From contig CDRNST010000015.1 in NCBI GenBank assembly GCA_977016875.1, positions 2,604,001-2,668,000 of the forward strand: a stretch of 64,000 nt of DNA. Reading direction: 5' to 3'. The position numbers were made by a program, and so were the translations under genes. The DNA is from Pavona decussata. Taxonomy: Eukaryota. The first letter of the stretch is position 1. Each line of letters begins with the position of its first letter. Of this stretch, positions 13,267 through 64,000 are shown in pieces. A model generated the notes under the pieces. The model saw only the letters and a program-made list of their open reading frames with translations. It was not told where the DNA came from and did not search any database.

Positions 13267-14186
13267 TTAGGTTATAGTGTCTGGCAAACCATCAGTAAGG
13301 TACGTTTTAGTGGAACCAGTCAAAGAGGAAATTCTTTTTTGTGCAAGGAACGACTTGTTGAAGCTAGCCTCCATTCTCACGGTGATATCCTTGAATACTT
13401 CGACCGACTCCCCGTGTTCTTCCAGAACGCGTCGCACCAATGCTTTCAGTAGATCGAAGCAGTGAATAAGTTGCCCTGCTCTCACAGGAATATCCATGTC
13501 TCTCAACGCATCTGAGTTTGGTTGCGCAATTTTGAAAGGCTTTTCCAAAGAAGACACAAACTCCGATAACTGGGCTAACGGGAGGTATGTCTTTCCGTCG
13601 TGAACAAACGTTCCCCACGTAATGTAGTAGCTGTCGAAGTTCTCCTTGGTGATGCAGAAATCCTCGATTTCGTGAGCGCGGTTCACGTTCTCAAGAATGA
13701 TAGCAATGTACATGTTAACAATTACAAGGAAGACGACTATGATATAGCTGGCCAAGTAAAGAACAGCACTGAACGAGCCACAGTTACCATTGGGAAGACT
13801 CAGGTAGGTGGGATCGCAATCTGGAGGCTGCAGCATCAACGCATCCATGATGTCATTCCATCCAGAGCCAGTAGCTAGGCGAAACAGCAGCAGAAGTGCA
13901 GTACCAAACGTTTCGAAGTTTACAGTGTCATTTAAATCGCCTTCTCGTTTTACATTTCCGAAAGCTGACATGCCAATGATCGCATAGATAAATATGACCA
14001 TGAATAGCAGGGTGCCAATGTTGAAGAGGGCTGGTAACGAGATCATGAGAGCCCACAAGAGCTGACGTATTCCCTTGGCAAACTCCACCAGCCTTAGCAG
14101 CCTGGCAATTCTGAAGATTCGTAGGACGCGAAGAAGACTGGGACTAACTGCACCTTCGTTTGCATTGAATTCGTCGAGCATCACAT
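13267..14186 (-). CDS. Nav2: Nav2 exon 23: DIV S4-S6, pore loop, C-terminus
   Basis: tcaatag|AT GTG ATG; [16 protein letters not shown]; [11 protein letters not shown]; [11 protein letters not shown]; stop TAA 13267. Confidence 0.95.
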
Positions 14187-17100
14187 CTATTGAAGCAAAT
14201 CAGAGAGTTAAATTCCTAGTATGGTGGAATTTGAAAGTTTAAATCTTTCACTTCCAAAAGGGGAAAGCAAGAAAAACAATAACATACTTCGTTTTGCATA
14301 TTATCAGGATAAAAAAGGCCGAAACGAATTAAGTTCGGCTTCTGTACAACAACTTTCATCTGAATGGCCACAGAACCACCTAGCTCAGCATGACAAACAG
14401 TACAACAGGATACTATTTCTGAATAGCTTTCATTTGGATCGCCCAACGACTCCAATTTTAGAACGATTTCCACAATAAGCCGTACCATAAGGAACGAGTG
14501 ACTTCCTCTAGATTGTCACTCTTCAGGATTTTATCCACAGGCTCAAAAATCGGAGCCACCTTGTACAGCAATAAACAGACAGAAAATGTTTGTTGAATGC
14601 ATTCATTTGAATGGTAAAACTTTAGCGATACGGTTTCATCCAAGGACTGAAGACTTCAAATACTAAAGAAAATGTCAGTGAAATGGTTCATTGTCGAACA
14701 GGATATCTCTGAAAAGTTAAGTTTTTTTTTTTTTTTTCTACACATTTCTATTCTTACACCAAGTGAACTTTCTGGGTGTTTTTTTGCAAGAAACCAAAAT
14801 AAATGGAAATACCCATTGGAATGAATGTCACAACCTAGTGACGGTTGCCAAAGCCCTTAACCTAAGTTGTTTTAACTAACTGAGAGGTTTTTCGATTGGG
14901 TGTCGCGTAATCAAGATGGCCAAGATGGCGAGATGGTCAACCTTTGCCAAGTTACAATGTAGATGTGCGTGTACAACAGACGTAAACGGCACAACGAAGC
15001 AAGATTCGAAGCAAATGAAAGTAAATGGCGTCACGTCGAGAAAATGCGTGCGAGCAACACACGTTCTTTCAGTTCTAATGTGTAGCCAAAGTGGAGCAAA
15101 TTAATAAACCAGTCAGAGAGAGTAGAAGAGTAACACTCGTTACTAAAAACCGCTCTTTTAACAAGTTTACATACCCACAAGAGAGCTGATAACGATGATG
15201 AAGTCGAACACATTCCATGCTTTCTTGAAATAATGCATCCTCAACGTCATAATCTTGACAATGGCCTCCAACAGAAATATTCCAGTGAAAACGAAATTGC
15301 AAATGCGTGAACATTGGTCAAGGAAGGTTGTAGTTTTTTTTCAATGGATTACATGATTGGTAAAATCTGTATGTATACTGTTTTCATGACAATTGACCTA
15401 TTTTCATGATAAACGGCACAAGGGGTCCTATCAACTTCTCACGCATTTGAACAGGTAAGCATAACATAGTGAAAGGATATGAAGGGCGTCAGTGACTTGT
15501 TCTGATTGTCCGTGATGTTGTATCGTCATCAATACCATGTTGCACATGATTACTGTCAGAATAGCGATCTCAAACTTATCTCCTGTTACCACGTCATATA
15601 ACACGCCACAAAGTCGTTCCTGGAAATCAAACGTTACAGGAAGATCAACTACAATACTCAAGACAGTAATACTACATATGCTAAAAGAACAACAAATGGT
15701 GACTCCACGTTCCAAATTTAGTTGCATTTTCTTGTCCACTTGATTTATGGCAGCTGGACTTATGCTAATGTCAACTGGCTGCCTGGCTCTGCTAGCCCCT
15801 ATGGTTATTCCAGGCAGCCAGTACTCTTCACGAAAATTGTGATAAACAATTCATAAGAAATCTGCCCATTCTGAGCCAGTCACAAGTTTTTCTGTAACTG
15901 TTCATGTGTTGAGTTTCCATGGCAACTATAGAAAACGTGCACGATCAGGTTGGGCTCACATGCACGTTCTCTTAACGCCCGTTTAAACGGTTTCAACGTT
16001 TGACCAACATTCGTTCAACAAAAGTTGAACGGATGTTGGGCAAATGTTGGACAAATGTTGAACGGAGTGTTCAAACGGCTTCAACACCATTCAACATTTT
16101 CGAGAACAAAGCAAATGTTGTATGGATGTTGAATTAAAATTGAAACCGATTGAAATTTGATTCAACACGCTTTCAACAAGCTTTCAACATTTTTTAAGCT
16201 TTCAGCAATGTTGGACGACCTGTTCAAACGCCCCCAACACTTGGTTCAACAAAGTGTTGAACGCGTGTTGAAGAAAATGTTGAAACCCTTGAAATGGGCC
16301 TTTACATACTCATATAAGAAAAAGATTCGCATACAACAAAGTCGGTAATGACATTCCATATCAACGAAAGAATTAATCTCCTTGGTTGTTTTCAGAACCA
16401 TTCTACGTGTTTGTTCATTTTGCAATACTTTGTCAAATTTTTGGTACTCCTGAAGTTTTCCTTTTTTTTTTTATTTAAACATATTTTATTGTCGAAGCTT
16501 GCCCTAAGAGGAAAAAAAAAACTCATCGAGAGGGCTCACTTCGAAATAACATTAAATTGAAAAATCAACATTAAATAATAATTAGTAAAAGCGGCGGCAA
16601 AATTAACAAAAAGCAGCATTAAGCAATGCTAACAGGTGGAAAATACACATCTAGGTACTTTTATAAAATCTCTTCGATTCAGATATAAAAGACTGGACAT
16701 GAAAAAATAGATAATTATTTTGTTTAGGAGAAAGTAACTGTTATCCAAGGCGACAGTTTTGTTACCTGTGTTAGTTTGAGTAACGTAATCTCTTTGTGTC
16801 CCTGAAGAAATAGTGAATTTCAAAATGTTTTTGCTTAGTTCATGTACGGCTTTCTCACAGGCCCTCACAGTCAATTTGTTTCGATGACGTTTCCGAGACG
16901 TACGGCTGGGAAAAGCCTCGCTTTTCCCTCTTACTCGTGACCCAAAACGGATTGATCAAGTTGAAAGACAGAGAAATGCCCAGGAACTAGACAACAAATG
17001 TTTATGATAATAGGGATTGGAGTCTTTGAATTACTTTATACCTGTGGACGAATCTGTCTGGTGGGTGGTTTTTTTCGAGCCGCTTCTTTGAGAAAGTTGA

Positions 17101-19725
17101 CCCACTTTCTCTGTGTGTCAGTCAATAGCATTCCCATGCTGTTAAGCTCTTCGTACTACAACAGAAAAGCCATGAGAGAAAAGTTAGCAGTGAGACCTGG
17201 CATTACTGTGGGATCCTGCATGCGCGGTATCTTTCAGGAAAATATGGGAGAAAAAAGACCAGGGCAAGTCTAAAATCCTTCTGACGTTTTCTTAGTCCCT
17301 CTTGACCAACTAAAAAGATATTGCGTTCCATTTCTGTACTAAATATTTCAGGACTACTGTAGACAATACATTCCAAGCATAAACAAGCATTGTTACTCGT
17401 CATCTCTTATTTTATTTTCGCCTAATGGTTCGAAAAAAATAAACACGGACGCGTAAAATTACCCACTGTACAACACAGCGTTCCGCCAAATAACCTTTTC
17501 TTATTGCTGAACCATGTGTACTCTGATGTCCTTACTGCATGTTATTAAGATTCGGTTGAGAATATTCTGAAGAAAGCATCAGAAATATTACAGCTCACCT
17601 TCTTCTTTAAAGTGTTGAAGTTATCAATAATGACTCCAACAAACAGATTCAGGACAAAAAATGATCCCACGACGATGAAGGCAATGAAGAACAAGTACGC
17701 CACCAACTTGTTCTCATACTTTGGTTGCAAATCCACCTAAGAGAAATAATGCAAAATCACACGTACTTTTGTGAGGGGGGTGTTTCTTTTGCGCCTCAAA
17801 TTGAAGAACTTATACAAAAAGACGTATATTGGCTGGGCTCATCGAATACTAACTGGAAATACGTGACTCGCAAAACCTCGCAAAGCTAGGGCTGGGTGGA
17901 CAATTTACTTCTACCTTGGTTGTACTGCCTGTGATATTCCTAATAAACGTTTTACACCAATGTAATAATTTTCGATAATTTTCCTGATAATCCAGCCCTA
18001 TCTGTAAACGGTATTGCAGTCCTTTTCTTTATTCGGGCATCAGATTTTATTGGAGAGAATGCGCTGCTCCAGACAGTTGAAAATATGCAGCAAGTATTCT
18101 CACAAGGGGTGTGCTAATATTTACCTCAGTAGAATCAACAGAATCCTGCATAACTTCCATCCATCCTTCAAAGGTCGCCTTAAAAAAATTATTCATTGTA
18201 ATGTAAAATTCGTCCTTAGGGAAAACGTCCTGTTACAGGTATTACTACAATGGATTCTACACCTGTACTGGTGAAACCTGCTTCACACTGCAAAACGAAC
18301 TGCAATCGTCGTCAAAACTCTGTTAAATGTATATTTCAATTACGTTTACAATGAAAGTATCAGTCGTTTTGCCTCATAAAAGATCTATCCGTTCCCGAAG
18401 AAAAACGTTCTTTGGCCAGGAAAATCTGCTTGATTGAGGAAACCAACATTGTGTTGAGGGGGACGGGTTTGATCTATGCAATCTAAGAAAGGTGCTACTG
18501 TCCCACGACGTTTCTTAACGATTATTGAGCTTAGCGCCATGTTTGAGTGCGTATTTACAATTTTTATTTGGTGACCCAGTTTTGTGGTCATTTGCATGTA
18601 CATACGATAAAAACGTGTCCATTCCAAAACGTACTTACTTTACTTACTTTCTGGTTATTTTGTAACTTGAAATTTTAATTGTTGATTTTAAAAAGCCAAG
18701 AATCGTCAGAAAAATTCCTCATAAGTTTCAAATGTACCCTAGTAATTTCTTTCTCTTGTTTTTTTCCTCCGACGTCTGAGGTTATAACTATGAGTAAAAG
18801 TCCAGTTTAGCGGAAGACAATGGTCTCCTCGAAAATAATTATTTTCCTGACCAAATTTTAAAGGTGTTTACTATTGTATTGCTATTGTAAAGAGCAAATT
18901 TGTCTAACTGGCAAATCAACTCACCACTTGCATGAGTGCAAGAAACCCAGCAAACACGTTATCAAATGTAACTTTGGAGTTTACCCAGCGATACTTGTCA
19001 GGGTGCCCAAGGCATTCTGCTTTGTTCGAAACAACATTTGCGGGTAACGGTTCATTGTTTTCATCCACGCACTTGTAAAACTTTCCAGCAAAGAGATGGA
19101 CCCCAAGAATGCTGAATATCAGCCAGAAGAGAAGAGAAACTAACAGCACATTTCCAATGCCTGGAATAGCAGCAAACAGTGCGTTCACAACTACCTATTG
19201 CGGGGAAAGACATACTGGTGGTTAATTATTTGTCAATGTTGACTATCAAAACTTTCTCTTAGGTCATTTCCAAATTGCCTTTAGCAGCTTTTCCAAAGAC
19301 TGGTGACGGATCATTTCCAGATGAATAGTTTTGGGCATTTGGTCTCCCTTCAGTGAGACGACTGAAGACCTTTAGAATGGCCCATTTTGCTTGTTTTAAT
19401 TATAAATGTTATCCTAAATTTATGTATAGGTAAAATAAATCACAAAATATACCGTCGACGTCAGCGACTAATTACAACGTCTTTTACAAATTAAGAGCAA
19501 GTCCAATAGTAAATTAGCTTGAAAGTTCACATGTAGCATGCCACTCTTTTCCAGCCAGTTAATGTTTTATGGTAACATAATGCATCGCTTTTTAATTCAA
19601 AACGTCTCAGTTTAACTGTTTTTCACCGCACTAATAGTCTTTAAATGTGTAAGTTGAGTTGCGAAAGTACAAAGATGATAATAATTCGACAAAAGTAGGC
19701 TACTCTTGAAGGGAAAATGGGGAAG

Positions 19726-19756
<31 letters not shown>

Positions 19757-22700
19757 AGGCGAAACGTAATCTATGCAGACAATTTACCCTAACATCTCGG
19801 TTGTTATTGAGGAAAATTCAAAAAATAAATCGAATATTTACCCTCATTCCTTCCAGTCGCGAGATGGCCCGCAGTGGTCTGAGCGCCCGCAATGTACGTA
19901 GGGAACGAAACACTGATAAGTTCTTGTTCTCAAAAACGCAGGCAAGTGAAATCTGCAAAAAATAAATATTGCAATGAATGCTAAGGTAAACTGGATTTTT
20001 CAGTGTGTTTTGATTTGCTACGACGGAGGGAAAAACTTCATGTTGTTAAATTCGGTGAGCTAGCTGTATGACTGGACTTTAAAAGTGAAACAAAACTGGC
20101 CAAATTTGTGGATGTAAAACAGATAAAAAAAATAAAATAGAAGGGAATTTCAGTGGCTTTCACAGAGTGGCTCCTTCATCCACTCTTTCCGTGTCGAATT
20201 GGAATTTGAGAAAGCTGGCTTTTCATGTCTGTAGCATGCCAAGCCAATGTTTAAGTTTTCAAAACGTAGGCCCTCTTTCCCTCTCGTAATTTCCATATCA
20301 AATCATATTCTTCTGCCTAGTTTAATTTCCTTATAAACAGAGTGAATGCTACATGTTAATCCCAATCCAATCAATCACGGGAAAGCAGAAATCAAAATCT
20401 TTTCGACTATTCTTACTTCAACACTTGGAGTGATCGAGACTCGTTGAGAAGTTCACCTGTGGTAACTAAGCTCGCTAGTGCACTTGTTGTTTAAGATAAG
20501 TCAAACTAAATGGTAAATGTCGGGTTTCCGTACAGTTGCTCTTGCGGCAGGTTTTTCGTTGATAAGAGATTGATTAACAATGTGACTGAAAAGCCCAGGT
20601 TGGGAGTTACAATAAGTGTAAGTATGCATATATCAAAACTTCTGTATTTCAACTTACTGAAACAATAAAAGCGTCCAGACAGTTCCAGGCAGAAGAGAAG
20701 TACTTTATGAGTCCAAAACCAATCGTCTTCAATATGAATTCGGCGGTGAAAATGGCAGCAAAAACGTAGTTGAGTATTTCTAATGCTTTAGCAAGCTTAG
20801 GCTTCTCATGTAGATGAACGTCTTCAAAAATCTGCAAGATAGGGAATGAAGACAAGAAAGCTGTATTCAGTAAATTGGCAAACAAAATAAATCAATTATT
20901 TATCCTCAATTCTATTTGCTTTCTTTTGTCTCATTCCCTTAACCCTAATGTCAAAGAACAAATTCTCCTATCTTGTTCCTATACTATACTTATAGAAGTT
21001 CAGGGCGAAATTCACCTTGTGTGATCGTATTCTTAATTCTCATGACGTCAGGTGTTGAATAAGCATTGATCTTACAAGGAGAAATTTGATGCTGATCACT
21101 GTTAGGGCTTAAAGGGTTCAAGCCTCGGAGCCAATTTTAGTGTGTGGCAAATGGCCTATCGAATCATTGAAGTCTACTTACAAATTTTAAAAAGCGCTCA
21201 AGGTTAAAGGAAAGCTCTACTCTTGAAATAAATTAACGTTAAATTGTTGAAAATACAATCTTATTTCAATATTTCGTCGGAAAACATGAAAAAGTATTTC
21301 CGTATCATACGGTTGCCCAATTTTGTCATACTGAAGAACTTCTGGCTTCTGACAATAGCGGCAAGGTATGACATCATAAAATTCAAAATGGCGGCTCGGG
21401 ACATTTAAAAGCGAAAATAGGCGACAATCATATCTAATTTTTAGTACACTTGAATGCTTTTCCACTTTTCAAAATAAAATTAAGAATTTAGACAGAATAT
21501 TTCCAACGTCAATTTGTTGTAAGAGTGGAGGTTGCCTTAAATATTTAAAAACCTTATATCTCCCATGGAGAAAGACCGCTGATTGTATATACTCTATACG
21601 AACTGCAAAAACAATTAAACAAACAAAAAAATTCAACAATCAACATACCAACGTGAAACTGCTGAAAAACACCGTGGCAAGAATAAACCATTCAAAGTAT
21701 TTCTTTTCCACGAGAACTCGCACCCTACAGCGGAACTTGAGCCAGCAGAAATGGCGCGGTGAGAATGGTTTCCACAGCGGACAGTCCACACAGTACTCTG
21801 GAAGGCAATCATCTATTTCCATCATGTACTGGGTAGGGAGCGGGGTTGAAATTCCCGTGCCATTTTCAGGAATGATTCGATCATCGCGTTCTATTTTGCA
21901 ACCTTTGGTTAGCGTTCCGCTGGGTGAAAAGTTGGCGTCGTCCACAGGATTTTGTAGCTCATTGTTTGGCGTGTTTGAGTCCTCTATCTCCAATATGCTA
22001 TCTAAAAGTGACAATAATCACATTTGATTGGAGGTGAAGGCCGCGTCGATCCCAATAGTTCACAACGTAAAAAAAAATAAATACATATTTATGCAGGATG
22101 ACCATTTCAGTTATAAAAACTGCTATCAACACGAGTCCTGCGTTCAAAAAAACTAGATCTAAAAAAGCTATACAAGAAATCGAGAAATCAACCATATGAA
22201 AAGAGATAAAAGGACTAAAATTAGAATTCACATACAATTATTAAAAATATCTGCCCCTTTATAAAAAAAAGGCTCTTTTAGTCGATTTCAATTTAACCCT
22301 ATCAATAACTAGTTTGTTAATCCTGAAAAAAGTTATTATCACTTCCAATACTAAAAAAAAATATTCAAAATTGTGTAAAACTTATCTTAGCTTTAGACCG
22401 CTTTTGCCAGAATCATCCCAGTTGAGTTATGTGGCAAATTACTTACTACACGCGCAACTAGCCAAGGGATTCTTTTTGGAGGGGTTCAAGAGGTAGGTAA
22501 TACTCATATCTCTGAATGTATGGAGACTTGGTTTTCTATGATGTTATACAATGGCCGTTCAACTAAGCAATATAGGAGAAACGAACCATTTTCCATGACA
22601 AATAAATAAACCTTAAAGCTTTTGGCACTATCTTAGTGCTCAGTCCTCAAATATGAACGTAAGATCTTTGCCATTGGATAGACTGTTGAACTTATTGCTT

Positions 22701-25700
22701 GACAATATCCTACAATCCCGAGATGACAGTTTATTCACGCATATCCAAGTTGTAGGAGAAAGCCGGGCACAGAATGTCATTAAGAGACTCAAGTTTTTTG
22801 TGCTAAAAAGTTGTCACAATAGCGAGGCAGCACTTTGTGTTCACAACTCGATCCTGAGGAGAGAGCGGGGCTTAAGAAACAAACTCGGTTTAATTTTTCT
22901 TCCCTAAGCAAAGCATCAATATGACATTCAAGTTATTCTTGGTCTGCTAACCTTTACAGGGTATGTCATAAGATTCCTTCCTATGATTCGTGCCCTCTGC
23001 TTCGCATATGGCCAGTGAGCCCCTGGCGTTTAGATCTGAGCAATGGCTACTCTCCAATACCTGTAGTTCATACAGACGAAAAGGCTCGCGGTATTTGGCC
23101 ACAAACAGGCGGGACTTGCGGGTACGGAATAGCTTCTTCGTGGAACATCTGGATGGACCTTCTACAGACCGCACCTCATCGGATGGATTGTTATCGGTCT
23201 CTCTGAAGTCAAACGCATTTACCAGAAGTGCCACAAACAAGTTGAGAACCTGCAAAATGTGATGAACAAAACGAGCAGAGAGTCAGTTCGATGGTCACAA
23301 AAAAAGGAAATCGTTACTGTAACCAATCAACCAGCGCAATGGCCATGCCAGGCAAGCCATTAATTAACTAATGAACATAAGTAAACAAATAGGCGGATCG
23401 ATTGATCAACCGATCGGTCAGTCAGTGAATATATCTATCCAAAAGAAGGTTAGTTTCTTAAGAAACCGTGCCGCTGCCTTTAGAGAGATTAGAGCGCTGA
23501 AAATCAAATAGCCTAAAGTTCCTTACTCAGTTTACACACCAGCGATTGCTGGCGACTTTTAAGAATCACAGAATCGCATTTCCTGACAATCGAAAGGGTT
23601 GGGAAAAAATTGCCTTCGCAGAAGGGGGTGGCACACCTGACGATTCCCACCAATCACAGCAACGAGCGAACAAAATCACCTGGTATCTCGCTGGCTTGTT
23701 AGTTTACATTTCATGGCGTTTGTCAAAACCAAGAGGCTATTGTAATTTTTAGAAAAACTACCGTGATAAAATAGTTTTAAATCTGTCTAACAGATCATGC
23801 AATTAAACAAGCAAACAAAATATTTTTTTATAATCAATCTATTGACTCATCTTTCGGTAAAGCGGTCTCTGGTTCTATGTTTCATGGAAGCAAACAGGAA
23901 ATATATTTACAATCAATCAATTAATCAATCAATCAGCCAGTTTATCAATCAAAGAAGCAACCACTCAAGCAAGCAATCGTTAACCAATCAACCAATTAGT
24001 AAATACTCTCTTGTTAAAGCGGTTACCGGTTATAAAACATTCAGTAATCAATCTGTAGTCACCAACACTACTCACAATGAAATTTCCAACAACTAGAACG
24101 GTCAGGAAGAACAGTATGGCCTTGGCAGCACTTGTGGCCCTCATGCAATCCCAGAGGGGCTCGATCCACTCCCCACACAATACTCTGAACACCATCATGA
24201 TAGCGTGCCAGAAGTCATTGAAGTTCCAGCGCGGCACACCATCTTCTCCAAACTTCTCCTCCGTGTAAGCCTTTCCAAATACCTTTATTCCCAGTACAGC
24301 GAAAATGTACATAACGACACTGAGTATGAGAGTGATATTGCCAACAGGCCCAACGCTTCTAGCTATGGCCTTCATCAGTCTCTCCATGGTCTTCCAGGAT
24401 TTAGCCAAACATAAAACTCGTATCTATCAAGAACAAAATGTAACCGTTTTGTTGTGCAAATGAGAGCTCGTCTTTCGTATGAAGTCAAAGGTGAAATAAG
24501 TATGGTTAATCAAACGGTGACGTGAGAAAATTGGAAATTTCAATCACTTTTTTCAAATTTCGAATAATTTAATTTCTCGAGCCTTTTTTAATGCTGAAAT
24601 TTCGGGCTAAACTAAAAAAGTAATTTGTCATCCATTATATCAGTCGTTCAGTCGTTCCTCCATCGTTACGTGGAGTCTTACTCCACGCGCTACCCCAGAT
24701 TGTTTTGTTAAACTACGTTTTCGTTAATCGACTGCAAGACATGTTCCAGTTTTTTCTGCTTCTCAGCTGTAAAGTGGTGAGTAAAAAGCTAGTAATCTTT
24801 TGTCTTTTATTTTTTTCCATTGGTGAGTAAGCTACCGTTTCAGAAGTGCTAACATTCAACTGAAAATGTCTCGTTTGTTTTCGTGGAAGTTTTCGAGGAA
24901 CTTTATTGAGTTATGCGATTTTCTTTCCTCACCAAAAGTTAATACCTTCAATTTTGAATTCAATCACGTAAATGTAAATATAAATTTAATGAAATTCATA
25001 ACCTTTATTTGGCAGGAAAAAATTAAAATATTGCGAGACCCTCCAGTAAGACTAAGAGGAATTAATGGTTTTATAATTATGCGTATTCTATAAATCTTCA
25101 AGGGCACACTTTAATTGGAGTCTCACTCTGTTGTGTGTCCCTCGCCACTGTATTATCTTTTCTTGGTTGGTGAAAGCTTTAATAAATAATGTCCAAGACA
25201 AACGTACGTCAGTGCATATTTTAAAAGCCAAATAAAAGTTTTTTTCGCGTATATTTTCTTACTAGCTTACCAGTCTTAACGTTCTAAAAACGCTTAGTCC
25301 CTCGGCAGATTTATAAAAGTATCCCAACAAGCTCCCTGACACTACGGTCGTATCAAACACGTTCCAACGGCTGTGGATAAACGCCATCGGTCCCATGGCA
25401 ACGAAGCGAAACACAATCTCTGCTGCAAACAGCATCGTGAACACCTGTATTAAGCAAATTCAAACACAAAGAACTTAAAGTTCGATTCCCATACACAGTC
25501 GCTGTCTTTGTCACAAGTGAGGGTTCCAAATTTTGCTTCCTATTTCCAAAGGTAACTGAACATTTCTTCTCAAGCAAATTAATAATTCAAGAGAAGACCC
25601 AAAAGGAAATCGCTTCCGTGAAGTAAATTTGGAAATTTCATCTTAATTATCATAAAATGTGGTGAACGTTTGCTTTCTTAACAATTACTAATGGTTTTAA

Positions 25701-28700
25701 AAGCTACATCAAACACTCGGAAAAGTGTTTTATCCGATTCCCAAAAGCCACGAAATTGATTAAATAAAAACTCGGCTGCTCCTCGTTTTTTTAATCCGTT
25801 TTTCGGTGTTTGAAAATGGTTGCCAGAAGTTGCCGCAAATTTATATTTAAATAGGTTTAGTTCTCACTTTAATTCATATTGAAGGATCTTAAATGAGGGA
25901 ACAGTAAGACTAAAAATAAAATACATTAGACTCTCTCAAGGTTTGTTTAAACATGGATTTTTTTTTGCTTTTTCAGCGTTACAAGAAGTAAGAACAACGT
26001 GGTATAGTTTAATCTTTCGCTTTAGGCTCGTAGAAATATCTCAAAGAAACTTGAATATTGAATAGTTGAATAACCTCCCTTAAACTGCGCCAGCAAGGTT
26101 CGACACAGTTCTTGATCGGATTGGTGAACCAATTACATAAAATTACTCTACAGAGGATGTAATGTTTGTTTGTATTTTAATTTACTAGATAGGGATTTAT
26201 CCATCAGATAAAGTTAGCTGCACTTTCAATAATTACTGATACAGAGTGTTTTGTTACTATAAGCCAAAATGTATATGATTACAGTTTCTGAGTCGTTTTG
26301 GGTATAAAATAGCGTCGTTGACTGGGAATGCTTTTGATCAAATCGGTCCGCATAAAGATCGCATATATTTTGGCCTTAAAAAAGAGATCAATCTTTTTCG
26401 GAAACCGCTACCCTAAATTCCAGGTAGTATCCCCCAATAGGAAGGCAACTGGGGCAGTGACGATGTGTTACTCACCAAATTCACGTAGTCTAAGACGTGC
26501 CGAAAGTCCGGATTAATCCCATGGTGGTACAGTGCCAGCACGACTGTGTTCAGGAGTATCAGCACCACAATCACAGCATCGAAGGTAGAATGAGAGGTTA
26601 TGACAACCATACACTTTTTTATCCTTTTCCAGCATGATACCATATGCAAAACAGCATTGGACTTTAAAAGACTCGTTTTATTTCCCCTTCTTAGTGTGCA
26701 ACCAGGTAAGAGGCAGTGACTTAATTTGGCGTGTTGTTTATCTGCGTGTTCTTTGGAGGACGAACCCTCGATTGAGTCGCTGTTGCCCACGGCGTCAGGC
26801 TTAGGTGGAGGTGGCTTGCTTCCATCCAAAGGAATTAGACGTTTCAGCGTTTCCTCGTCGGCTTGATATGAAGCTCCAGTTCGCCGCAGATGATTCCTCT
26901 TTTCTCTCTGTGAATTTTAAGTAACAAAGGCAAATGGTAAGAGACTACTGATAGAGACCATAAGAACCGAGAGAGGCTATTTCCATGAAATAAATGAATC
27001 ATGCGGTCATACATTCTGAGAACTTAGTCAAGTTTACATGATATTCAATGCAACTGATGAACTCGAACACTCTTATCCATCGACCCTTATCGCCCATAGA
27101 AATGTTACAGAATCTTACCTACTACACATAAAGGTTTCTCTATTATCAACAAGTTAATCTAGTGAATTGGGATCTGGCTGCTGCCCTTGTTTGAGTTTCG
27201 AGTGGGTTGTTTATGGTATCAGCGGAATGCAAAAATTCTGCCCGAGATGGAAGCTACAATCATGAACAAAATCCTGGCTGTCCCAACCTTCCCCAACTTT
27301 GGATGTGGAGCCCGTGTGTCCAGAATGCAGAGTCTGTGTGCCCAAAATGTTTCTTACATGCCAACAACGATTTTGGGGAGGAAGGGAAACACTCTACCTA
27401 AACGGGATAATTGCCGTTTAATCCGAGGAGAGGTCGAATATTCATGTTAGTATGGATAACTTAAGCTTTGTCCCAAGGACTTTTGCCCGGTATCGCCTGA
27501 ATAGATTGTTGTCAAAGTGTTAATGTTGTCCAAGAATGACTAAACTTTCACTATCTTAGTACAAAACCAACAAATTCACTTTATAATTTCGGATTTCTAT
27601 AAGGATTCTCATCGACTACCTCTTTCTCCTCTGAACACAGCTCCAGCTCATAAGACAGATACACCACGGCAAGAACCAGGTTCATCAGATAAAAGGAACA
27701 AAAGAATACTCCGATAACAAAATACGGAACGTACAGGGCTCCAGAGGACCTGATGATCTAAAGGCAGCAAATGGATTAATTAAATTAATTCAAATCTTAC
27801 CATCTCAACAAAATAGTAGATTGATTAACTTCACCTGTTTGTAACAATTTTTTGCTCTCGCCACTACGCCATCCCAGCACCCCAACCCTCCTCCACACCC
27901 AAAATTAAACGAAAAACAATCGGTCCATACCCCAGAAGTCCTCACGATCTAAACAGTACAATGCCAAATGAATTAAGAGAAAGTTTACCGGTAGTAATGA
28001 TAAGGTAGATCTGTACCGATCCCTGTTTATTCGATTTTGAGTTAATTGGAATTCTACACTGGGGAGCCGAATGAGCACAGAACGTTTCACCCATTTCAAA
28101 TCCCAGATTGGCATAACATGTGGGATAAAACAGTTCTTGGTTCACGTCCTTGCACACAGGGAATGCTCTCCGGATCTTTCAGTTTCTCTCCCTCTGCAAA
28201 GATCAACATTTTCAAATTTAGGTTTAAATTTCAATTTGATTTGTGTGTAGCTGAGGACCGCCCCAAAAGCCACCTGCGAGATAAATTACTTTCCTTCCTA
28301 AATATCACCGATTTATTTATAATGATGAATCCCAATAGTTGGGTTGTGACACTCTTTGAGAAGAGGAACGTAGAGAGGTAAGCCAACGGGAGGGCTTTTT
28401 TTAAGTAGGAGGATTCATTCTTTTCTCCTGAGCAAATTGAACTGCAATAAAAACTAATTGGCACAATTCAGATGTTAGGACGGCTCTATTGTGTCAATTG
28501 CACAATGAAACTTAAATTGATACATGGCCAATGAACATATCAAGCTGACTAAGGAAATAGTGGCACTCTCGTTGGTTGGGTTACCTTGTCGTAAAGGTTC
28601 TCCCAGTAATCCATCGTCAGTATTTGTAGAGCCATAACCAGTGACCATCCAATGTTGTCAAACGTCGTGTAACCATTGTCGGGGTTTTCACCAGCGTTCG

Positions 28701-31700
28701 GCATACATGTGTAATTGGATGGACAAGATCTACATCGAGAAAAAATGAGAATAAGGCAGGAAAAAGAAGCGGTTCGTGTCAAAGAAAAGGGTTGCAATGG
28801 CTGATTCCGTGAATTTATCAGTTCATCCTTGCTGTGACTGCTGACCCGTAGAAAGAGCATTGTTTGACAGTAAAGTTCACGCCTCGTCACAGTTTACCCT
28901 ATTCTCATGTAGCATACATTTTGCATCCTGGTAGAAGCGATTGAAGTCAGTTGGACTCTGAGTTACACAATCGACTGAGGAAATATGGCAATCCTCTGGC
29001 CTTACCAAACATGTAATGTGCAGCCTATAACGTACTCCTCTCAAACCTTTTAATTTGGTCAAGACATTGTGTTGAATGGCTTTCGAATAAGAATGTAAAA
29101 AGACACCTTTGTCGCAATATCTGCTCTTTTAATTTAAGTATAGATTTTAGTTAATTTTCCCTTGTAATGAATTATGTATCGGGCAATGTATTTTACTGGC
29201 AATAAAGCGTTAAAACAATCCTTTGGATTTAGATTTAAAAACCTGATTTTCTCCAGACAAGAAACTTTTTCTTTCCAACGTTAACACTGTTCCCACTTAG
29301 CACACAGATTGTTTGAGAGTTATAACAAATATCTTGAAATTTTGGGATCGGTTGGATTTAGCGAGTCTTGGTGTTATTGCCTTCAACCTCAGTGTAACGA
29401 TTAGCTAAAACAAAGGTATCCGATTAGAAAAATTGACTGAAAGCTTATGACAATGCCCTTGAGAGAAGATTATGACTAATAAATTGATATAATATTAAAT
29501 TTCACCAAGTTTTCTTTTTTTTTTTTTCAAAATTACGTTGAAGAGTTGATATTTACCCAGCGGTTGAACCGTTTCCGCAAATCAAAGGTTCGCCTTCATG
29601 CATAAACCAAAAACCTGAAGGAAAAACGGTTTTCTGTTATTTATCATGACTTTTCACGTTTTCACTATTCAGTAATTTAGTGTCCACTTCACTGTGACAT
29701 TTGTAGACAGTAAACACAATGGAAGAGGAGTGAAGATTCCATAATTACAAGGACACTGGTATTGCACCCCTCTAAAATTTTTCTTTCACTCTATGTGGTC
29801 TTATTAATTCCCACCAACGAATGCCCCTCACAAGGTCTATGAGCCATTCGGGACTGAAAAAGGACGGAAGGTTTGAAACTTTTGTCTTTAAAGACAAAGC
29901 TAAACCGCAGTCTCTACTCAAAAATAGGGCATGGATTTTGCCGTTTTTAACTAAAAGAAAAAAAAGTAAAAGGAGTGTAATTATGTTCGTCGAAAATACC
30001 GTGTACCAGAAATCGTGATATAAGGTTGTCAGGATGTTCATCTAGATAGCTAAGTCACAACCCTATATGAATTCCTCTGTAGTATTTTTCTCCTGGTTCC
30101 GCTGATTTAAGTAATTTCACGATAGCACAATTACTGTCCCTTACTTTCGTTTGGAGCTCGCTCTTGCATGTTCAGGGAAATATTGCCAACTGGAATATTA
30201 AGGACGCATTTGTTCCTCAGCTCTCCAGAAAACAGCTGAAGACCAATGAGCGCCATGACAGCGAGAAAGAACAGAAACAAAACCAAGACATCACTAAGTA
30301 GCTTCAGGGAACGGAGTAACGTATTCACCATAGCACGGAGACCTAAAGAGAAAACAGCAAGATTTATTCCATGCTAAAAGTCAAAACAAGAACCTGGTGG
30401 TAGGCAAGTTTCATGGAAGTCCAGTCCAGTGATTGTGAATTTATCCATCACCGTCAAAAGGTATTTTTTTGTATCCTCAACCGTCAGAGGGTTTACCTCA
30501 TTAATGCCCACTGATGTCGTCCGAATGACTGAGTGGACGTTTTCGTGTTGAAACCCACCTTACCATTATAGAAACAGGGCTAGCAGGGTACAAAATACAT
30601 TCTTTGTACTGGTGGCCAGAAACAAATTGGAATGCCCCCACTCCCTAGGCCAGAGATATCCCTGAATATAACCATTTTGACTTAGTATCTTAACCCTTTA
30701 AGCCCTAACAGTGATCAGCATCAAATTTTTTCTGGTAATATCAATGCTTATTCAACCCCTGCAGGTCTTGGAAATAAAGGATGTGATCACCCAAGGTGAA
30801 CCTGATATTTTAATAACTTCTCGGCCCAAGTGCTTTTAAAATAAAAGTATGGGGACAAGATAGGAGAATTTGTTCTTTGATATTTAGGGTTAAAGGGTTA
30901 ATCAGATCTCGAATATCAGGGTAATTATTCAGTGAGATCTTGTCCTCCTTTTGCCATACAAACACTGTCAGTAGTTCGTACTTTGATTACCCTATTTTCA
31001 AAATGGCCCATATCGTCTTGAAATTGTCTACCTGATTTAAACTGAGATGTTAGGCGTTTCAATTGAATTACCTTTCAAGGCAGAAAATGTTCTTAGCGCT
31101 CTAAGAACACGGATTGTTCTGATTCCTGTCAAGTTGGCGATATTTGGTGCCACAGTGATGTACCTGCAATGACGCGTTTAGCCTGTTAATAGCATCACAG
31201 AGACGTCTTAGAGACCTAACTACTATCATTCAAAGTCCTGTTTAAATTTCGCTTGCTGTCTGGCCTTTGCCGGCTATTCTTATAGTAATGCGAGGATTTA
31301 AGTTGCAAGGGAAACGTTAATAGGCCTTGTACATCAAAAAATCCTCTAAAAATTTGGGCTCAGTGCGTGCTTTGGTTACTAAGAATGATACCTACCCTAA
31401 AACAACGACAATAAAATCTAGCCAGTTCCACGCATCCCTCAGGTAAGCGTATGTATGAAAGATGAATCCGCGAGACAAAATCTTCAGAATCATTTCCAGC
31501 GTGTATATACCGCAGAAAACGTACCTGAGATAAAAAACACGTTGGTAAGATCAGAAACCACCTTTAAATGTGATCCCAGCAATAAAAGCCTGCAGTGGTA
31601 AGAAGTTTTTCTTCTGTATAAAGTCTTTGATGCAAGCATCATAGGAACTTACAAAACTGTCTGTCCCAAATGCTGCCGCAGTAAATAAATGTTCTTGCAG

Positions 31701-34076
31701 GGGTGCTCTGTATTTTCTACTACCATAAAATGTAGCTCACTCCGGCCCTTGTATTTCTGGGTTCTTATGATCTGAATTAGACCTAGAAATCAAGGGGTCT
31801 GACGTAAATCTGACCCAGACGGACCTTTAAAAACCAAGCTAGCCATTTTTTCTTTTGGAGTACCGATCCAACCACCTATCAAGAAGGCCTTAATAGGGCT
31901 TAATTGTTTGTTTTTTTGTTGTTGTTGTTTATATTAGGCAAGCTTAATCGTATCAGAGATTTTTTATGAATCATTCTAAGATATTTGAAATATGTTTTTT
32001 TTTATATCCTAGGTAGGTTTCTTCACGAGAATCTAGCAGCACTTTGTCAAAACTGTCCTAAAATAATTACTATAATCCTCCTAAGATCCTAATCTAAGAT
32101 TTTCCTAAGACACCAAGAGGAAAATTTCAAATGAATTTTCATCAAATTCTTGTAGGGAGGGCGAACAACATGGTCTGCGAGAGACCCGGGTACCCGGGCA
32201 ATCCGCCCTCCATGTAAACAGGCCCTTAGCTTTGCGTGATTAGACAGTACTATCAAAAATAGAAAACGTATTCTTCTAAAGTACTAATTTAAACAGTTTA
32301 CTTACTCAGCCTCATCCGGTGCACATTCAACCACGAGAAACACACAGTTGGCTAAGATGGTGAGGATAACAAAGGACTCAAAATATCTGCACTCAAATTT
32401 AAGGACCAATAGCTGCAGATTCATTGTCATTTTCATTCGCTTTTTTGTATAGCGACAACGTAACAAAGCCTACGTTTTTCCCAACCGTCACCACATCCCG
32501 GCCAGCCATCCGAGAAACACTGGGAAGGCGCTTAGCGGGAGGAGGTAGCCAAATGTGTTTTTGCATCGAAACCTTCGCGTAGGGATTAGACATTCAAGGT
32601 TGTGAAGAGATCGCAAACTTTCATAAATGCCATTTCGTTTCATAAAAATTCTAGTTCGACAAAATTTAACTACCAGGCGTTTTGGCACAGTATCTCATGT
32701 TTTCGTCTCATTTTTCTTTTACTTTCTTTCTTTAAAAAATAAAGAAGAAACGGAGGAGACGTCAAACTGCATGAGCATGAATAAAATGCCTACGCTCTAT
32801 ATTTGGACGGCTAACATGATATGATTTGTGAGAAAGTGAGAAAACACTTATGATCCTTTTTTGATATAGCCCAACTATGACCCTCTAACCTGACCTAAAA
32901 CTTAAATAAGAATAGTAAGCAGTGTACCAAAAGACTGATAACACATCATTTCTGGCCAGTGAGCATAGGCCCCTGTTGCAATTTCAAAGGATACCGATTT
33001 GTTACGACGCTGATCGCAAACTGCCTGACGGGACTGAGGGGCTCCAGCAGACCCAATGAGGGGGCCTTGTTGAATCTGTAAACGTGATCAGAACGTGCAT
33101 TCCCTCGACGACGAACCACGAGAAATGTATGATTGCAAGGAACCTTAAAAAGATAATAAAATTCGGTGAACCTTCCACTTGAAAGAAAAGCACATCCATG
33201 CCACAAGGAGGAAGCAGGCCTTGTTTCGTTTACACGTTAACTTACTCTGTTTCTTCAACACGAAGCAATTAGGAGTGCTGCTGCTTCTACTACAAGCAGT
33301 TGGAAAAAGGTTGATACACTCTCGCGAAAAAACAAATTTCTCCCATATTACACAATAATATCTTGTTGAAAACACATGCTCAAGGGTTTAACCATACTGA
33401 ATCACGGAATCGCACAACATTGATTATTGGGGGGAGGGTAGGCAAGGTCGACTTGTATACTGAGACTGTTATTCTTTTTCAATATACGTGCAGCACATCC
33501 TTGAATTACTCGGAGCATGTTGTTAGTTTTTCCTCACGATTTGCTGTTAACAGGAGCCCATGACCCGAAGCCTAGTCCTTCATCGTACTTTTCCTTGGAA
33601 CCAATCCTTTCCCGAGTAGATTTAATTTTAGAACGGGTCTCAGGGGACCTTTGGAACGCCTACAGTTCAAATACCCAATCAAAGAACAACAATGGCAATT
33701 CCAGGGAAAGCAGTTTTAAAAATAAATCTACCCCGGAAAGGATTCATTCAAGTAATTAATACAGATGGAGATTACCTGAGTCTGGAGCCCTGTTGGTAAC
33801 CATTTATTTAATGAAAACCATTTAGCACGCCATTTGGGTTGAGAGGGACTATAGTGTTAAAATGAGTTAATCCCTGATATACCCTTGTATTTGTGTGGAT
33901 TAATTTTCTAGTGACTGTTTTCAAGTTGTTCAGTGGAATATTTCACTTACCCTTCCCATGCCCGCGTCAAAATCTACCAGCGGTTTTCCAATAAAGTAGG
34001 AAGGCATCCGAGCCACTTTGGGACCTTTAGGCTCTTCATCCATGACCACTTCCGGGTCCTCGCTTTCTCCCTCCAT
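13267..34076 (-). CDS. Nav2: Voltage-gated sodium channel alpha subunit, Nav2 type (four domains); 23 coding exons, ~1590 aa from ATG 34076
   Basis: Exons in transcription order: 33951-34076, 32995-33143, 32306-32386, 31396-31524, 31072-31163, 30145-30342, 29557-29614, 28585-28729, 27620-27757, 26476-26907, 25271-25444, 24076-24423, 22952-23249, 21649-22001, 20658-20831, 19842-19952, 18925-19194, 18125-18178, 17599-17736, 17042-17155, 15481-15619, 15175-15306, 13267-14186. Total 4773 nt, all phases compatible, no internal stop. Four S4 segments; pore loops TMDYWE, CGEWIE, TFEGWM, TGSGWND. The true start may lie further upstream. Confidence 0.96.
15175..15306 (-). CDS. Nav2: Nav2 exon 22: DIV S2-S3
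   Basis: (R)[43 protein letters not shown]; AC acceptor, gtatgt donor. Confidence 0.92.
15307..15480 (-). other. U12-type AT-AC intron
   Basis: 5' splice site ATATCCTTT; branch TTCCTTGAC ~12 nt upstream of a terminal AC; removal gives in-frame DALRICNFVF. Confidence 0.93.
15481..15619 (-). CDS. Nav2: Nav2 exon 21: DIV S1
   Basis: [46 protein letters not shown]. Confidence 0.92.
15975..16301. mobile_element. Harbinger-like MITE in Nav2 intron 20
   Basis: Imperfect TIR acgcccgtttaaacggtttcaac / gttgaaacccttgaaatgggcct; TTA TSD; internal gttgaa/ttcaac subrepeats. Confidence 0.7.
17042..17155 (-). CDS. Nav2: Nav2 exon 20: DIII-DIV linker (inactivation gate)
   Basis: [38 protein letters not shown]; canonical splice sites. 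Confidence 0.92.
17599..17736 (-). CDS. Nav2: Nav2 exon 19: DIII S6
   Basis: [46 protein letters not shown]. Confidence 0.95.
18125..18178 (-). CDS. Nav2: Nav2 exon 18: DIII pore loop (54 nt)
   Basis: [18 protein letters not shown] between ag and gtaa. Confidence 0.93.
18925..19194 (-). CDS. Nav2: Nav2 exon 17: DIII S5 and turret
   Basis: [42 protein letters not shown]...[14 protein letters not shown]. Confidence 0.95.
19842..19952 (-). CDS. Nav2: Nav2 exon 16: DIII S3-S4
   Basis: [37 protein letters not shown]. Confidence 0.95.
20658..20831 (-). CDS. Nav2: Nav2 exon 15: DIII S2-S3
   Basis: [12 protein letters not shown]...[31 protein letters not shown]. Confidence 0.95.
20939..21120. mobile_element. 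piggyBac-like MITE (same family as 30694-30897 and about 43797-43978)
   Basis: ttaaccct...gatcactgttagggcttaaaggg; reverse-complement match to 30694-30897. Confidence 0.65.
21208..21536. mobile_element. TTAA-flanked TIR element (Kolobok-like MITE)
   Basis: ttaa-aggaaagctctactctt ... aagagtggaggttgcc-ttaa, imperfect TIR. Confidence 0.5.
21649..22001 (-). CDS. Nav2: Nav2 exon 14: DII-III linker end and DIII S1
   Basis: ...DDCLPEYC...[32 protein letters not shown]. Confidence 0.93.
22952..23249 (-). CDS. Nav2: Nav2 exon 13: DII S6 end and DII-III linker
   Basis: [13 protein letters not shown]...YDIPCK; phase-1 donor gttagc. Confidence 0.9.
24076..24423 (-). CDS. Nav2: Nav2 exon 12: DII S4 end, S5, pore, S6
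   Basis: [13 protein letters not shown]...[31 protein letters not shown]...GNFI. Confidence 0.95.
25271..25444 (-). CDS. Nav2: Nav2 exon 11: DII S2-S4
   Basis: [14 protein letters not shown]...WNVFD...[10 protein letters not shown]. Confidence 0.95.
26476..26907 (-). CDS. Nav2: Nav2 exon 10: DI-II linker and DII S1
   Basis: [15 protein letters not shown]...[23 protein letters not shown]...DYVNL. Confidence 0.9.
27620..27757 (-). CDS. Nav2: Nav2 exon 9: DI S6
   Basis: [46 protein letters not shown]. Confidence 0.93.
28585..28729 (-). CDS. Nav2: Nav2 exon 8: DI pore loop
   Basis: SCPSNYTC...[34 protein letters not shown]. Confidence 0.95.
29557..29614 (-). CDS. Nav2: Nav2 exon 7: DI turret
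   Basis: [19 protein letters not shown]. Confidence 0.92.
30145..30342 (-). CDS. Nav2: Nav2 exon 6: DI S5
   Basis: [22 protein letters not shown]...[15 protein letters not shown]. Confidence 0.95.
30694..30897. mobile_element. piggyBac-like MITE in Nav2 intron 5
   Basis: TTAA|ccctttaagccctaa ... ttagggttaaaggg|TTAA. Confidence 0.8.
31072..31163 (-). CDS. Nav2: Nav2 exon 5: DI S3-S4 (92 nt)
   Basis: [30 protein letters not shown]. Confidence 0.95.
31396..31524 (-). CDS. Nav2: Nav2 exon 4: DI S2-S3
   Basis: [43 protein letters not shown]. Confidence 0.95.
32306..32386 (-). CDS. Nav2: Nav2 exon 3: DI S1
   Basis: [27 protein letters not shown]. Confidence 0.93.
32387..32994 (-). other. U12-type GT-AG intron
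   Basis: 5' splice site GTATCCTTT; branch-like GTCCTTAAA ~11 nt before the 3' AG; no polypyrimidine tract. Confidence 0.9.
32995..33143 (-). CDS. Nav2: Nav2 exon 2: N-terminal domain
   Basis: [13 protein letters not shown]...[29 protein letters not shown]. Confidence 0.9.
33951..34076 (-). CDS. Nav2: Nav2 exon 1 (first identifiable coding exon; reading frame stays open up to 34217)
   Basis: [11 protein letters not shown]...[20 protein letters not shown]|gtaagt, matching the Nav N-terminal P-x(5,6)-PLEDxD motif. Confidence 0.8.
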
Positions 34077-63173: not shown

Positions 63174-63366
63174 TTAAGTTCCAAACCAAAGCTGATAGGA
63201 GCATCAAGTGGTAACATAGTCTGGCCAAAGTTTTGTTCTATTACTTACATTAAAGCCTCTAGGTCCCCACGATGAACAGCGTTAACATATGTTACATCTA
63301 TTAAAATATCCTCAGATGCTGCTTGTTTTGCCTTAAAACTTGGATCAGCATTTGTATCCTAGAAAG

Positions 63367-63639: not shown

Positions 63640-64000
63640 GTGAGTACCGTTGAACGTAAAAACTGTAAATGTTTGTTTCAGAAGCTAAGATGTCATTTAA
63701 AATCAAACGCATCTAAGTTTTAAAAAAGGAAATGAATTTTCAAAGTATCAAGATTTTGCCAAAAGTTCTGGATAGCAGCAAGCAAGTTATAAGGTTGAGA
63801 AAAAAGACAACAGTTTTAATTTTTAAATACATGTTTCGCCAGCTCTTCTGTCGTCTTCAGTTTTAAATAGTTAAGTACAAAGTTGAATTTATAATAAGTA
63901 CATAGAAATGTTAACGCTTATTCTGTTTTTACTTGCTATTCAAGAGAAAATAAGGGGACAGAGAGGGAGATCCCCAGTATAGCCCTTGGGACATGTTAAT

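What the first reader, a model, noticed from the sequence alone, without database searches (positions are those of the whole stretch)
13864..28611. Nav2 channel with a D-E-E-S selectivity filter
Seen: filter residues are DI Asp (TMDYW, 28609-28611), DII Glu (CGEWI, 24169-24171), DIII Glu (TFEGW, 18167-18169) and DIV Ser (ATGSGW aligned to TTSAGW, 13864-13866), with an unusual Gly before the DIV Ser. Known: Nav1 is DEKA; cnidarian Nav2 channels are described with DEEA, DEET or DKEA; lysine-free rings pass Ca2+. Inference: a Ca2+-permeable or non-selective channel with a rare DEES ring, probably derived within the DEET clade. DI keeps the aromatic Tyr at the TTX position.
Basis: partly seen in the sequence, partly recalled or inferred. 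Interest (0 to 1): 0.7.

Follow-up and report, generated by a model that had tools for sequence, protein, structure and literature searches.

The report
Ordinary coral Nav2 channel, DEES pore
This is a normal stony-coral voltage-gated cation channel gene of the Nav2 family; its Asp-Glu-Glu-Ser pore ring is real but is the usual state in corals and is already listed in reviews, so it is not a rarity.

Summary
On the minus strand the codons GAT (28609-11), GAG (24169-71), GAA (18167-69) and TCT (13864-66) lie in TMDYW, CGEWI, TFEGW and ATGSGW. They align column for column with D/E/K/A of a Nav1 channel. They belong to one 23-segment gene (about 13267-34256), colinear with a 1645-aa Montipora capricornis protein.

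The gene is a lysine-free Nav2 channel, so Ca2+ permeability is likely by homology. It is not rare. The same DEES ring occurs in public protein models of Acropora digitifera, A. palmata, Montipora capricornis and Oculina patagonica (orthologues). It also occurs in a second paralogue clade (Montipora foliosa, Pocillopora damicornis, Oculina, Porites lobata). That paralogue sits head-to-head next to this gene in the same genome and is also DEES. Reviews from 2015 and 2018 already list DEES as a Nav2 variant. The "unusual" Gly is shared by a whole anthozoan subfamily (TG[A/S/T]GW).

A full-length tree places the coral DEES genes as sister to, not inside, the sea-anemone DEET genes (NvNav2.2 type).

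An independent metagenome scaffold (98.3% DNA identity) keeps the TCT codon. The scan had not noted this on other DNA. Interest is low.

The parts
13267..34256 (-). Whole Nav2-type gene (paralogue 'a'): 23 protein-matching segments from the ATG homologous to the orthologues' start down to the stop codon
   Evidence: tblastn of Montipora capricornis P0267 (1645 aa) gives 23 colinear hits covering residues 2-1645, and Oculina P0266 gives the same. Limits are HSP limits, not exact splice sites.
28609..28611 (-). Domain I filter residue Asp (GAT) in TMDYW; the Tyr at 28606-28608 is the Nav1 'TTX' position
24169..24171 (-). Domain II filter residue Glu (GAG) in CGEWIE
18167..18169 (-). Domain III filter residue Glu (GAA) in TFEGW, where Nav1 has Lys
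13864..13866 (-). Domain IV filter residue Ser (TCT) in TGSGW, aligned to the Ala of DEKA/DEEA
13867..13869 (-). Gly (GGC) before the DIV Ser; a trait of the anthozoan TG[A/S/T]GW subfamily
13267..14190 (-). Last exon: DIV S4 to S6, P-loop, C-terminal tail and stop codon (13267-13269)
   Evidence: Pfam Ion_trans E=7.6e-39. 301 bits to human Nav1.7 DIV. The end is colinear with P0267 residue 1645. dN/dS 0.053 against the Acropora-like locus L002.
28555..28740 (-). Exon with the DI P-loop
24073..24423 (-). Exon with DII S5, P-loop and S6
   Evidence: Ion_trans E=1.7e-24; 92% identity to P0267
18083..18178 (-). Exon with the DIII P-loop
31070..31162 (-). DI S4 voltage sensor ([13 protein letters not shown], Arg at every third position)
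25268..25441 (-). DII S2 to S4 exon (ends [10 protein letters not shown])
19821..19970 (-). DIII S4 ([18 protein letters not shown])
17042..17155 (-). DIII-DIV linker exon; MLLT (17131-17120) stands where Nav1 has IFMT
   Evidence: 97% identical to P0267
33948..34256 (-). First coding exon. The ATG at 34256-34254 is homologous to the orthologues' start, but an in-frame TGA follows at 34220-34218. The next in-frame ATG is at 34076-34074.

Best explanation
The stretch is one of two neighbouring copies of a stony-coral (scleractinian) Nav2-type voltage-gated cation channel gene. It is a co-orthologue of the sea-anemone channel described with a DEET filter (NvNav2.2). It encodes four homologous six-helix domains with Arg-rich S4 voltage sensors. 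The inner pore ring is Asp-Glu-Glu-Ser. That ring has three carboxylates and lacks the Lys that makes Nav1 (DEKA) and cnidarian Nav2.5 (DKEA) sodium-selective. The channel therefore most likely opens on depolarisation and passes Ca2+ together with, or in preference to, monovalent cations, as the tested DEEA and DEET relatives do. The Ser and the Gly before it are the normal state of this gene in stony corals, not a peculiarity of this genome.

Shown here: the sequence, the gene structure, the orthology, the distribution of the ring and purifying selection. Inferred: ion selectivity and gating.
For: - Motifs and codons.
- Alignment to Nav1 and Nav2 filter columns.
- Family: Ion_trans domains. 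The best solved-structure matches are Nav1 chains, ahead of Cav and NALCN.
- Gene structure: complete and colinear with the 1645-aa Montipora and 1629-aa Oculina proteins.
- Distribution of DEES: Acropora digitifera P0269 (88% identical in the last exon), A. palmata P0270, Montipora capricornis P0267 and Oculina P0266. It also occurs in paralogue b: M. foliosa P0265, Pocillopora P0268, Oculina P0272 and Porites P0278. TGSGW is in 35 of the 120 nearest clusters.
- Trees: in the DIV tree the window falls in a 10-row all-TGSGW clade (97*). In the careful full-length tree, anemone DEET plus coral DEES a+b has support 100/99, and the TGAGW clade is sister at 100/100.
- Own genome: the neighbouring head-to-head paralogue is also D/E/E/S.
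- Selection: dN/dS is 0.053, and only exons align with the Acropora-like locus.
- Independent scaffold: it carries the same Ser codon.
- Literature: NvNav2.1 (DEEA) and NvNav2.2 (DEET) conduct Ca2+ (PMC3809514). DEES is listed among calcium- or non-selective rings (PMC6259924 and PMC4436565).
Against: - No current has been recorded from any DEES channel in the papers I could search, so selectivity is inferred only.
- Filter residues alone do not fix selectivity. In Nematostella the DKEA ring needed the whole P-loops to give Na+ selectivity. Honeybee DEEA CaV4 excludes Na+, whereas cnidarian DEEA channels pass it.
- NvNav2.2, the nearest tested relative, gave no inward current in oocytes.
- In this assembly, the frame from the ATG homologous to the orthologues' start hits a TGA after 12 codons. 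The true N-terminus, or even the activity of this copy, is therefore not certain.
Confidence: 0.85

Rival explanations
1. The Ser hydroxyl (with the preceding Gly) is a selected, functional change. It gives coral DEES channels a permeation or block profile different from DEEA and DEET channels, for example an altered Ca2+/Na+/K+ ratio or altered divalent block.
For: Ser is invariant in both scleractinian paralogue clades (10 and 22 rows) across deep coral splits, and Thr is invariant in the four sea-anemone rows. The site is therefore fixed by lineage and does not drift freely. The DIV P-loop TGxGW resembles the TGE[A/G/S]W of Cav channels. NvNav2.2 (DEET) behaved differently from NvNav2.1 (DEEA) in oocytes.
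Against: The review PMC6259924 states, from modelling and mutagenesis, that the fourth ring position does not coordinate ion selectivity, and it treats G/S/T as small-residue substitutions for Ala. The sister of the window's clade in the DIV tree (7 rows, P0006-P0012) has Ala, so the site can switch. There are no functional data.
Confidence: 0.15
2. This particular copy is a recently disabled or N-terminally altered gene. The reading frame from the conserved start ATG is closed by a TGA after 12 codons.
For: ATG TTT at 34256-34251 matches the MF start of three orthologues. About 36 extra bases follow, with an in-frame TGA at 34220-34218. There is no second copy of this stretch in the assembly.
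Against: All other 22 segments are open and colinear with full-length orthologues. A conserved in-frame Met (34076-34074) lies downstream in a poorly conserved cytoplasmic N-terminus. A branch-point-like TACTAAC plus AG just upstream suggests a 5' exon that I could not place. A single assembly slip would have the same effect.
Confidence: 0.07
3. The Ser codon is a sequencing or assembly error, and the true residue is Ala or Thr.
For: A single base separates TCT from GCT or ACT. Reads were not available.
Against: An independent metagenome scaffold (98.25% identity) has the same TCT. The Acropora-like locus L002 has TCT. The paralogue loci L003 and L005 have TCA. Eight named coral proteins have Ser at this site.
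Confidence: 0.01

Closest known systems
Predicted scleractinian orthologues in public protein sets (Acropora digitifera 'sodium channel protein 60E-like' P0269, A. palmata P0270, Montipora capricornis P0267, Oculina patagonica P0266)
   Same: Same gene. They are 84-88% identical in the last exon, colinear over the whole protein, and have the same TMDYW / CGEWI / TFEGW / TGSGW motifs.
   Different: Different species: the nearest sequence is an unnamed metagenome scaffold at 98% DNA identity. The exon 1 start region differs in this assembly.
Nematostella vectensis NvNav2.2-type channel (DEET; P0263) and its Actinia tenebrosa orthologue (P0264)
   Same: Sister group (100/99 support). They have the same TGxGW DIV loop and a Lys-free ring, and are 60% identical in the last exon. 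NvNav2.2 conducts Ca2+ in oocytes (PMC3809514).
   Different: Thr instead of Ser in DIV, CSEW instead of CGEW in DII, TYEGW instead of TFEGW in DIII, and Phe instead of Tyr after the DI Asp. I equate P0263 with NvNav2.2 from the DEET motif only, not from an accession.
Nav2 / DSC1 / BSC1 / honeybee CaV4 channels (DEEA)
   Same: Same family: four domains and D-E-E-small ring without Lys, with 48-51% identity in DIV. They are Ca2+-conducting where tested.
   Different: Ala and TSAGW in DIV. The bilaterian proteins are longer, and several match the Pfam families PF16905 and PF24609, which were not recorded for the coral proteins.
Nav1 (DEKA) and cnidarian Nav2.5 (DKEA) sodium-selective channels
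   Same: Overall architecture. The best solved-structure matches are Nav1.7, Nav1.4 and Nav1.2.
   Different: No Lys in DII or DIII, and MLLT instead of IFMT in the DIII-DIV linker. The genome has its own Nav2.5-like gene elsewhere (L008, FRVGTAAGWNTI).

Membership tests
Four-domain voltage-gated channel of the Nav lineage | Four homologous repeats, each with S1-S6 and a P-loop, in one polypeptide | tested here: met
   23 colinear tblastn segments cover residues 2-1645 of a full-length orthologue. Ion_trans hits fall in exons of DI to DIV. One P-loop motif is present per domain.
Four-domain voltage-gated channel of the Nav lineage | Closer to Nav than to Cav or NALCN by sequence | tested here: met
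   The last exon scores 301 bits to Nav1.7, about 190 bits to Cav1.2 and 96 bits to NALCN.
Four-domain voltage-gated channel of the Nav lineage | S4 helices with a basic residue at every third position | tested here: met
   [11 protein letters not shown] (DI), FRTLRLV (DII), [14 protein letters not shown] (DIII) and [15 protein letters not shown] (DIV), read from the translations.
Nav2 (DSC1/BSC1-like, Ca2+-conducting Nav homologues) | Inner ring D-E-E-small residue, with no Lys in DII or DIII | tested here: met
   D/E/E/S in the filter columns.
Nav2 (DSC1/BSC1-like, Ca2+-conducting Nav homologues) | Falls within the Nav2 radiation in a tree | tested here: met
   The orthologue group nests among cnidarian Nav2 proteins, with bilaterian 60E-type channels as outgroup. 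No Nav1 sequences were in the trees, so the Nav1/Nav2 split itself was not tested.
Nav2 (DSC1/BSC1-like, Ca2+-conducting Nav homologues) | Conducts Ca2+/Ba2+ and is not Na+-selective | not testable with these tools
   Needs electrophysiology. Known only for DEEA and DEET relatives.
NvNav2.2-type (DEET) orthologue group | Monophyly with the sea-anemone DEET genes, excluding other anthozoan Nav2 paralogues | tested here: met
   10-row clade with 100/99 support in the careful full-length tree. The window's own placement rests on the DIV-exon tree (97*) and on colinearity.
NvNav2.2-type (DEET) orthologue group | Thr at the DIV filter position | tested here: not met
   Ser (TCT) at 13864-13866. All scleractinian members seen have Ser.

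The most novel reading that the evidence does not exclude
Stony corals have kept a head-to-head pair of Nav2.2-type genes in which Ser, after a Cav-like Gly, has stayed fixed at the fourth ring position since before the deepest coral split, while sea anemones fixed Thr. If this lineage-fixed hydroxyl residue tunes Ca2+ versus monovalent permeation or divalent block, DEES/DEET channels would form a functionally distinct Nav2 subclass, and the view that the fourth ring position is irrelevant to selectivity would need revising.
Probability: 0.12. Interest if true: 0.35.

Novelty: already known. Interest (0 to 1): 0.12.

Why it matters
It matters little as a discovery. The DEES ring is already listed for Nav2 channels in two reviews and is present in annotated proteins of several coral genera.

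The useful results are negative or descriptive:
- The ring is the scleractinian norm in two neighbouring paralogues.
- The Gly-Ser or Gly-Thr DIV loop marks one anthozoan Nav2 subfamily.
- The coral genes are co-orthologues of the one DEET channel that has been recorded.

No DEES channel appears to have been expressed and recorded. A coral DEES clone with S-to-A and S-to-T mutants would be a small, clean test of whether the fourth ring position matters in a Lys-free pore.

Tried and rejected
- Spliced protein: I did not build or search one. All searches were exon by exon, by reference, and the joined step was left out. The full-length tree uses named orthologues in place of the window's protein.
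- 50%-identity representative search: it gave no full-length TGSGW representative. The group is represented there by the Nematostella DEET protein P0122. A second word search seeded with that protein was needed to get named coral proteins.
- Species: I could not name it. The nearest sequences are unnamed metagenome or Logan contigs. By identity it is a scleractinian, nearest to Acroporidae among the named taxa, but not Acropora or Montipora themselves (88% and 86% in the last exon).
- 7-row TGAGW sister clade (P0006-P0012): I considered finding out which animals carry it, but dropped this because the records carry no organism names.
- Scripts: the script machine was lost.
- Rejected reading, a Cav or NALCN gene: Nav chains score far higher.
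- Rejected reading, a sequencing error at the Ser codon.
Full report
**Observation.** Translating the minus strand at the four stated places gives:
- [13 protein letters not shown] for domain I
- [15 protein letters not shown] for domain II
- [10 protein letters not shown] for domain III
- [15 protein letters not shown] for domain IV

The codons are GAT, GAG, GAA and TCT, and the window contains no N. A phmmer search of the 305-aa last-exon frame against PDB chains gives Nav1.7 as the best match (301 bits). It aligns ATGSGW without gaps to TTSAGW, so the Ser sits on the Ala of DEKA. A MAFFT add-fragments alignment of the four P-loop exons to eleven full-length channels puts D, E, E and S in the columns of D, E, K, A of a bird Nav1.5-like protein and of D, E, E, A of a crayfish 60E channel.

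**The gene.**
- tblastn of the Montipora capricornis protein P0267 (1645 aa) against the window gives 23 colinear minus-strand segments from 34214 to 13270, covering residues 2-1645. The Oculina patagonica protein P0266 gives the same picture.
- Pfam Ion_trans is found in exons of the DI, DII, DIII and DIV pore regions and of DII S1.
- The S4 helices carry the usual Arg repeats.
- Against an Acropora-like locus (L002), only the exons align, at about 78-88% DNA identity. The last exon has dN/dS 0.053, with dS near saturation.
- I built no spliced protein and ran no search with one. Every search was made exon by exon, by reference, and the joined step was left out.

**A caveat at the 5' end.** The orthologues start MFVKSSLIGK. 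The window has ATG TTT at 34256-34251, but about 36 extra bases follow, with an in-frame TGA at 34220-34218. The next in-frame ATG (34076-34074) is a Met that the orthologues also have. A TACTAAC-AG just upstream of the ATG looks like a splice acceptor. The stretch is single-copy in the assembly. I cannot say whether this reflects a shorter N-terminus, an unplaced first exon or an assembly slip.

**How common is DEES?**
- A word search with the last exon returned 639 hits. Among the best 120 clusters, 35 have TGSGW, down to 63% identity. Others have TGAGW, three have TGTGW, two have TSSGW, and the more distant ones (insects, Actinostola) have TSAGW.
- The exhaustive representative search gave the Nematostella protein P0122 as the nearest full-length sequence.
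- A second word search seeded with P0122 gave named anthozoan proteins. Reading their four motifs gives:
  - D-E-E-S in Acropora digitifera P0269, A. palmata P0270, Montipora capricornis P0267 and Oculina patagonica P0266. These are 84-88% identical to the window in the last exon.
  - D-E-E-S in a second clade (66-68% identical): Montipora foliosa P0265, Pocillopora damicornis P0268, Oculina P0272 and Porites lobata P0278.
  - D-E-E-T in Nematostella P0263 and Actinia P0264.
  - D-E-E-A with TGAGW in Exaiptasia, Actinia, A. digitifera, Pocillopora and Stylophora.
- In the window's own genome (602 Mb) there are six Nav-type DIV exons: two TGSGW, one TGAGW, one TSAGW and two TAAGW, one of which resembles Nav2.5.
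- The second TGSGW gene lies head-to-head with this one. Its first exon is at window 63367-63639 (+) and its last exon is 19 kb beyond the window end. Its other filter motifs are TMDYW, CGEWI and TFEGW, so it too is DEES.

**Literature.**
- PMC6259924 (2018) lists DEEA, DEES, DEEG and DEET as calcium- or non-selective rings. It states that Gly, Ser and Thr replace the Ala in Nav2 channels (citing Moran 2015), and that the fourth position is not involved in coordinating selectivity.
- PMC3809514 reports that NvNav2.1 (DEEA) carries mainly Ca2+/Ba2+ with PK/PNa = 1 and is insensitive to 100 uM TTX. NvNav2.2 (DEET) conducts Ca2+ but gave no inward current. Filter residues alone did not confer Na+ selectivity.
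- Honeybee CaV4 (DEEA) excludes Na+ altogether.
- In the searchable library I found no paper that recorded a DEES channel.

**Phylogeny.**
- A quick ML tree of the last-exon region (88 rows) shows a long-stemmed anthozoan clade of 76 rows (100*), 72 of them with Gly at position -1.
- The window sits in a 10-row all-TGSGW clade (97*) with Acropora, Montipora and Oculina. Its sister is a 7-row unnamed TGAGW clade (100*).
- The second TGSGW clade has 22 rows (95*). The four TGTGW rows form a separate sea-anemone clade (100*).
- A careful tree of 26 named full-length proteins (1537 columns) resolves the deeper nodes. Nematostella plus Actinia DEET is sister to coral DEES a+b with support 100/99. 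Coral a+b has support 83/85. The TGAGW clade, which holds both anemones and corals, is the next sister at 100/100.
- The window's gene is therefore a co-orthologue of the anemone DEET gene, duplicated in the coral line.
- The Ser codons are TCT (a) and TCA (b), and the Ala codon in the genome's TGAGW gene is GCT. Ser, Thr and Ala are all one base apart. With Ala in the outgroups, Ala-to-Ser plus Ala-to-Thr and Ala-to-one-then-the-other both cost two changes, so the polarity is open.

**Mechanism.**
- Shown: four domains with charged S4 helices, a Lys-free D-E-E-S ring, strong purifying selection, and orthology to a Ca2+-conducting channel.
- Inferred: a depolarisation-activated channel permeable to Ca2+ and probably also to Na+ and K+, like NvNav2.1 and NvNav2.2. 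I put about 0.65 on Ca2+ being a main carrier. I put 0.85 on the overall reading that this is an ordinary coral Nav2.2-type gene.
- The DIII-DIV linker reads MLLT where Nav1 has IFMT, so fast Nav1-style inactivation should not be assumed.
- Ser is fixed in both coral paralogues and Thr is fixed in anemones. This leaves room for a modest functional role of the hydroxyl (rival, 0.15). The review literature and the Ala-bearing sister clade speak against a large effect.

**Reads and earlier notes.**
- In place of reads, an independent metagenome scaffold (L001, 98.25% identical over 1088 bp including non-coding flanks) carries the identical ACT GGC TCT GGA TGG.
- The scan's earlier notes near this place were the same finding and three first-reader notes on the same window. 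A word search found nothing on other DNA.

**Verdict.** The claim of rarity is wrong, and the 'would refute' condition on novelty is met: DEES is widespread in coral orthologues and is listed in reviews. Interest is low.

Noticed in passing
window 34218-34256 (-): The ATG TTT homologous to the orthologues' MF start is followed by about 36 extra bases with an in-frame TGA (34220-34218). The next in-frame ATG is at 34076-34074. A TACTAAC-AG acceptor-like site lies just upstream of the ATG. It could be a shorter N-terminus, an unplaced 5' exon or an assembly slip.
   Followed up: partly
window 63367-63639 (+), continuing in L011, L012 and L005 (G000:C15:2667001-2689520): Head-to-head paralogue of the Nav2 gene, 68% identical in the last exon, about 29 kb between the two first exons. 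It also has a D-E-E-S ring. Its orthologues are the 'b' clade (Montipora foliosa, Pocillopora, Oculina, Porites).
   Followed up: yes
window 34095-34106 (-) and 63340-63642 (+); alignment A1: The N-termini of both paralogues, of their coral orthologues and of Nematostella P0263 share an invariant V-x-F after basic residues (KRVRF / KKVVTF). Only the conservation was checked.
   Followed up: partly
window 17120-17131 (-): The DIII-DIV linker reads MLLT at the place of the Nav1 IFMT inactivation motif. The exon is 97% identical to the Montipora orthologue.
   Followed up: partly
L010 (G000:C78:3916678-3917205, +): A Cav-like DIV P-loop (FRITTGEDWNKIM) lies in an open frame of 1804 aa with no stops. 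This may be an intronless four-domain channel gene, which would be unusual beside the 23-segment Nav2 gene.
   Followed up: no
L003 contig (ERZ25071792 ctg18934, 1,996,647 bp) and the 354,118-bp contig of P0047/P0066: Other, unnamed host contigs carry several of these paralogues together: P0023, P0043 and P0045 on one, and P0047 (TGSGW) with P0066 (TSSGW) on another. The clustered arrangement therefore seems conserved. One lineage has Ser at the ring position without the Gly.
   Followed up: no
P0006-P0012: The sister clade of the window's DEES orthologue group has TGAGW (Ala). Four of its clusters hold 8 to 337 member sequences each from ENA metagenomes. The host organisms are unnamed, so it is unclear whether this is a reversal inside stony corals or another hexacoral order.
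   Followed up: no
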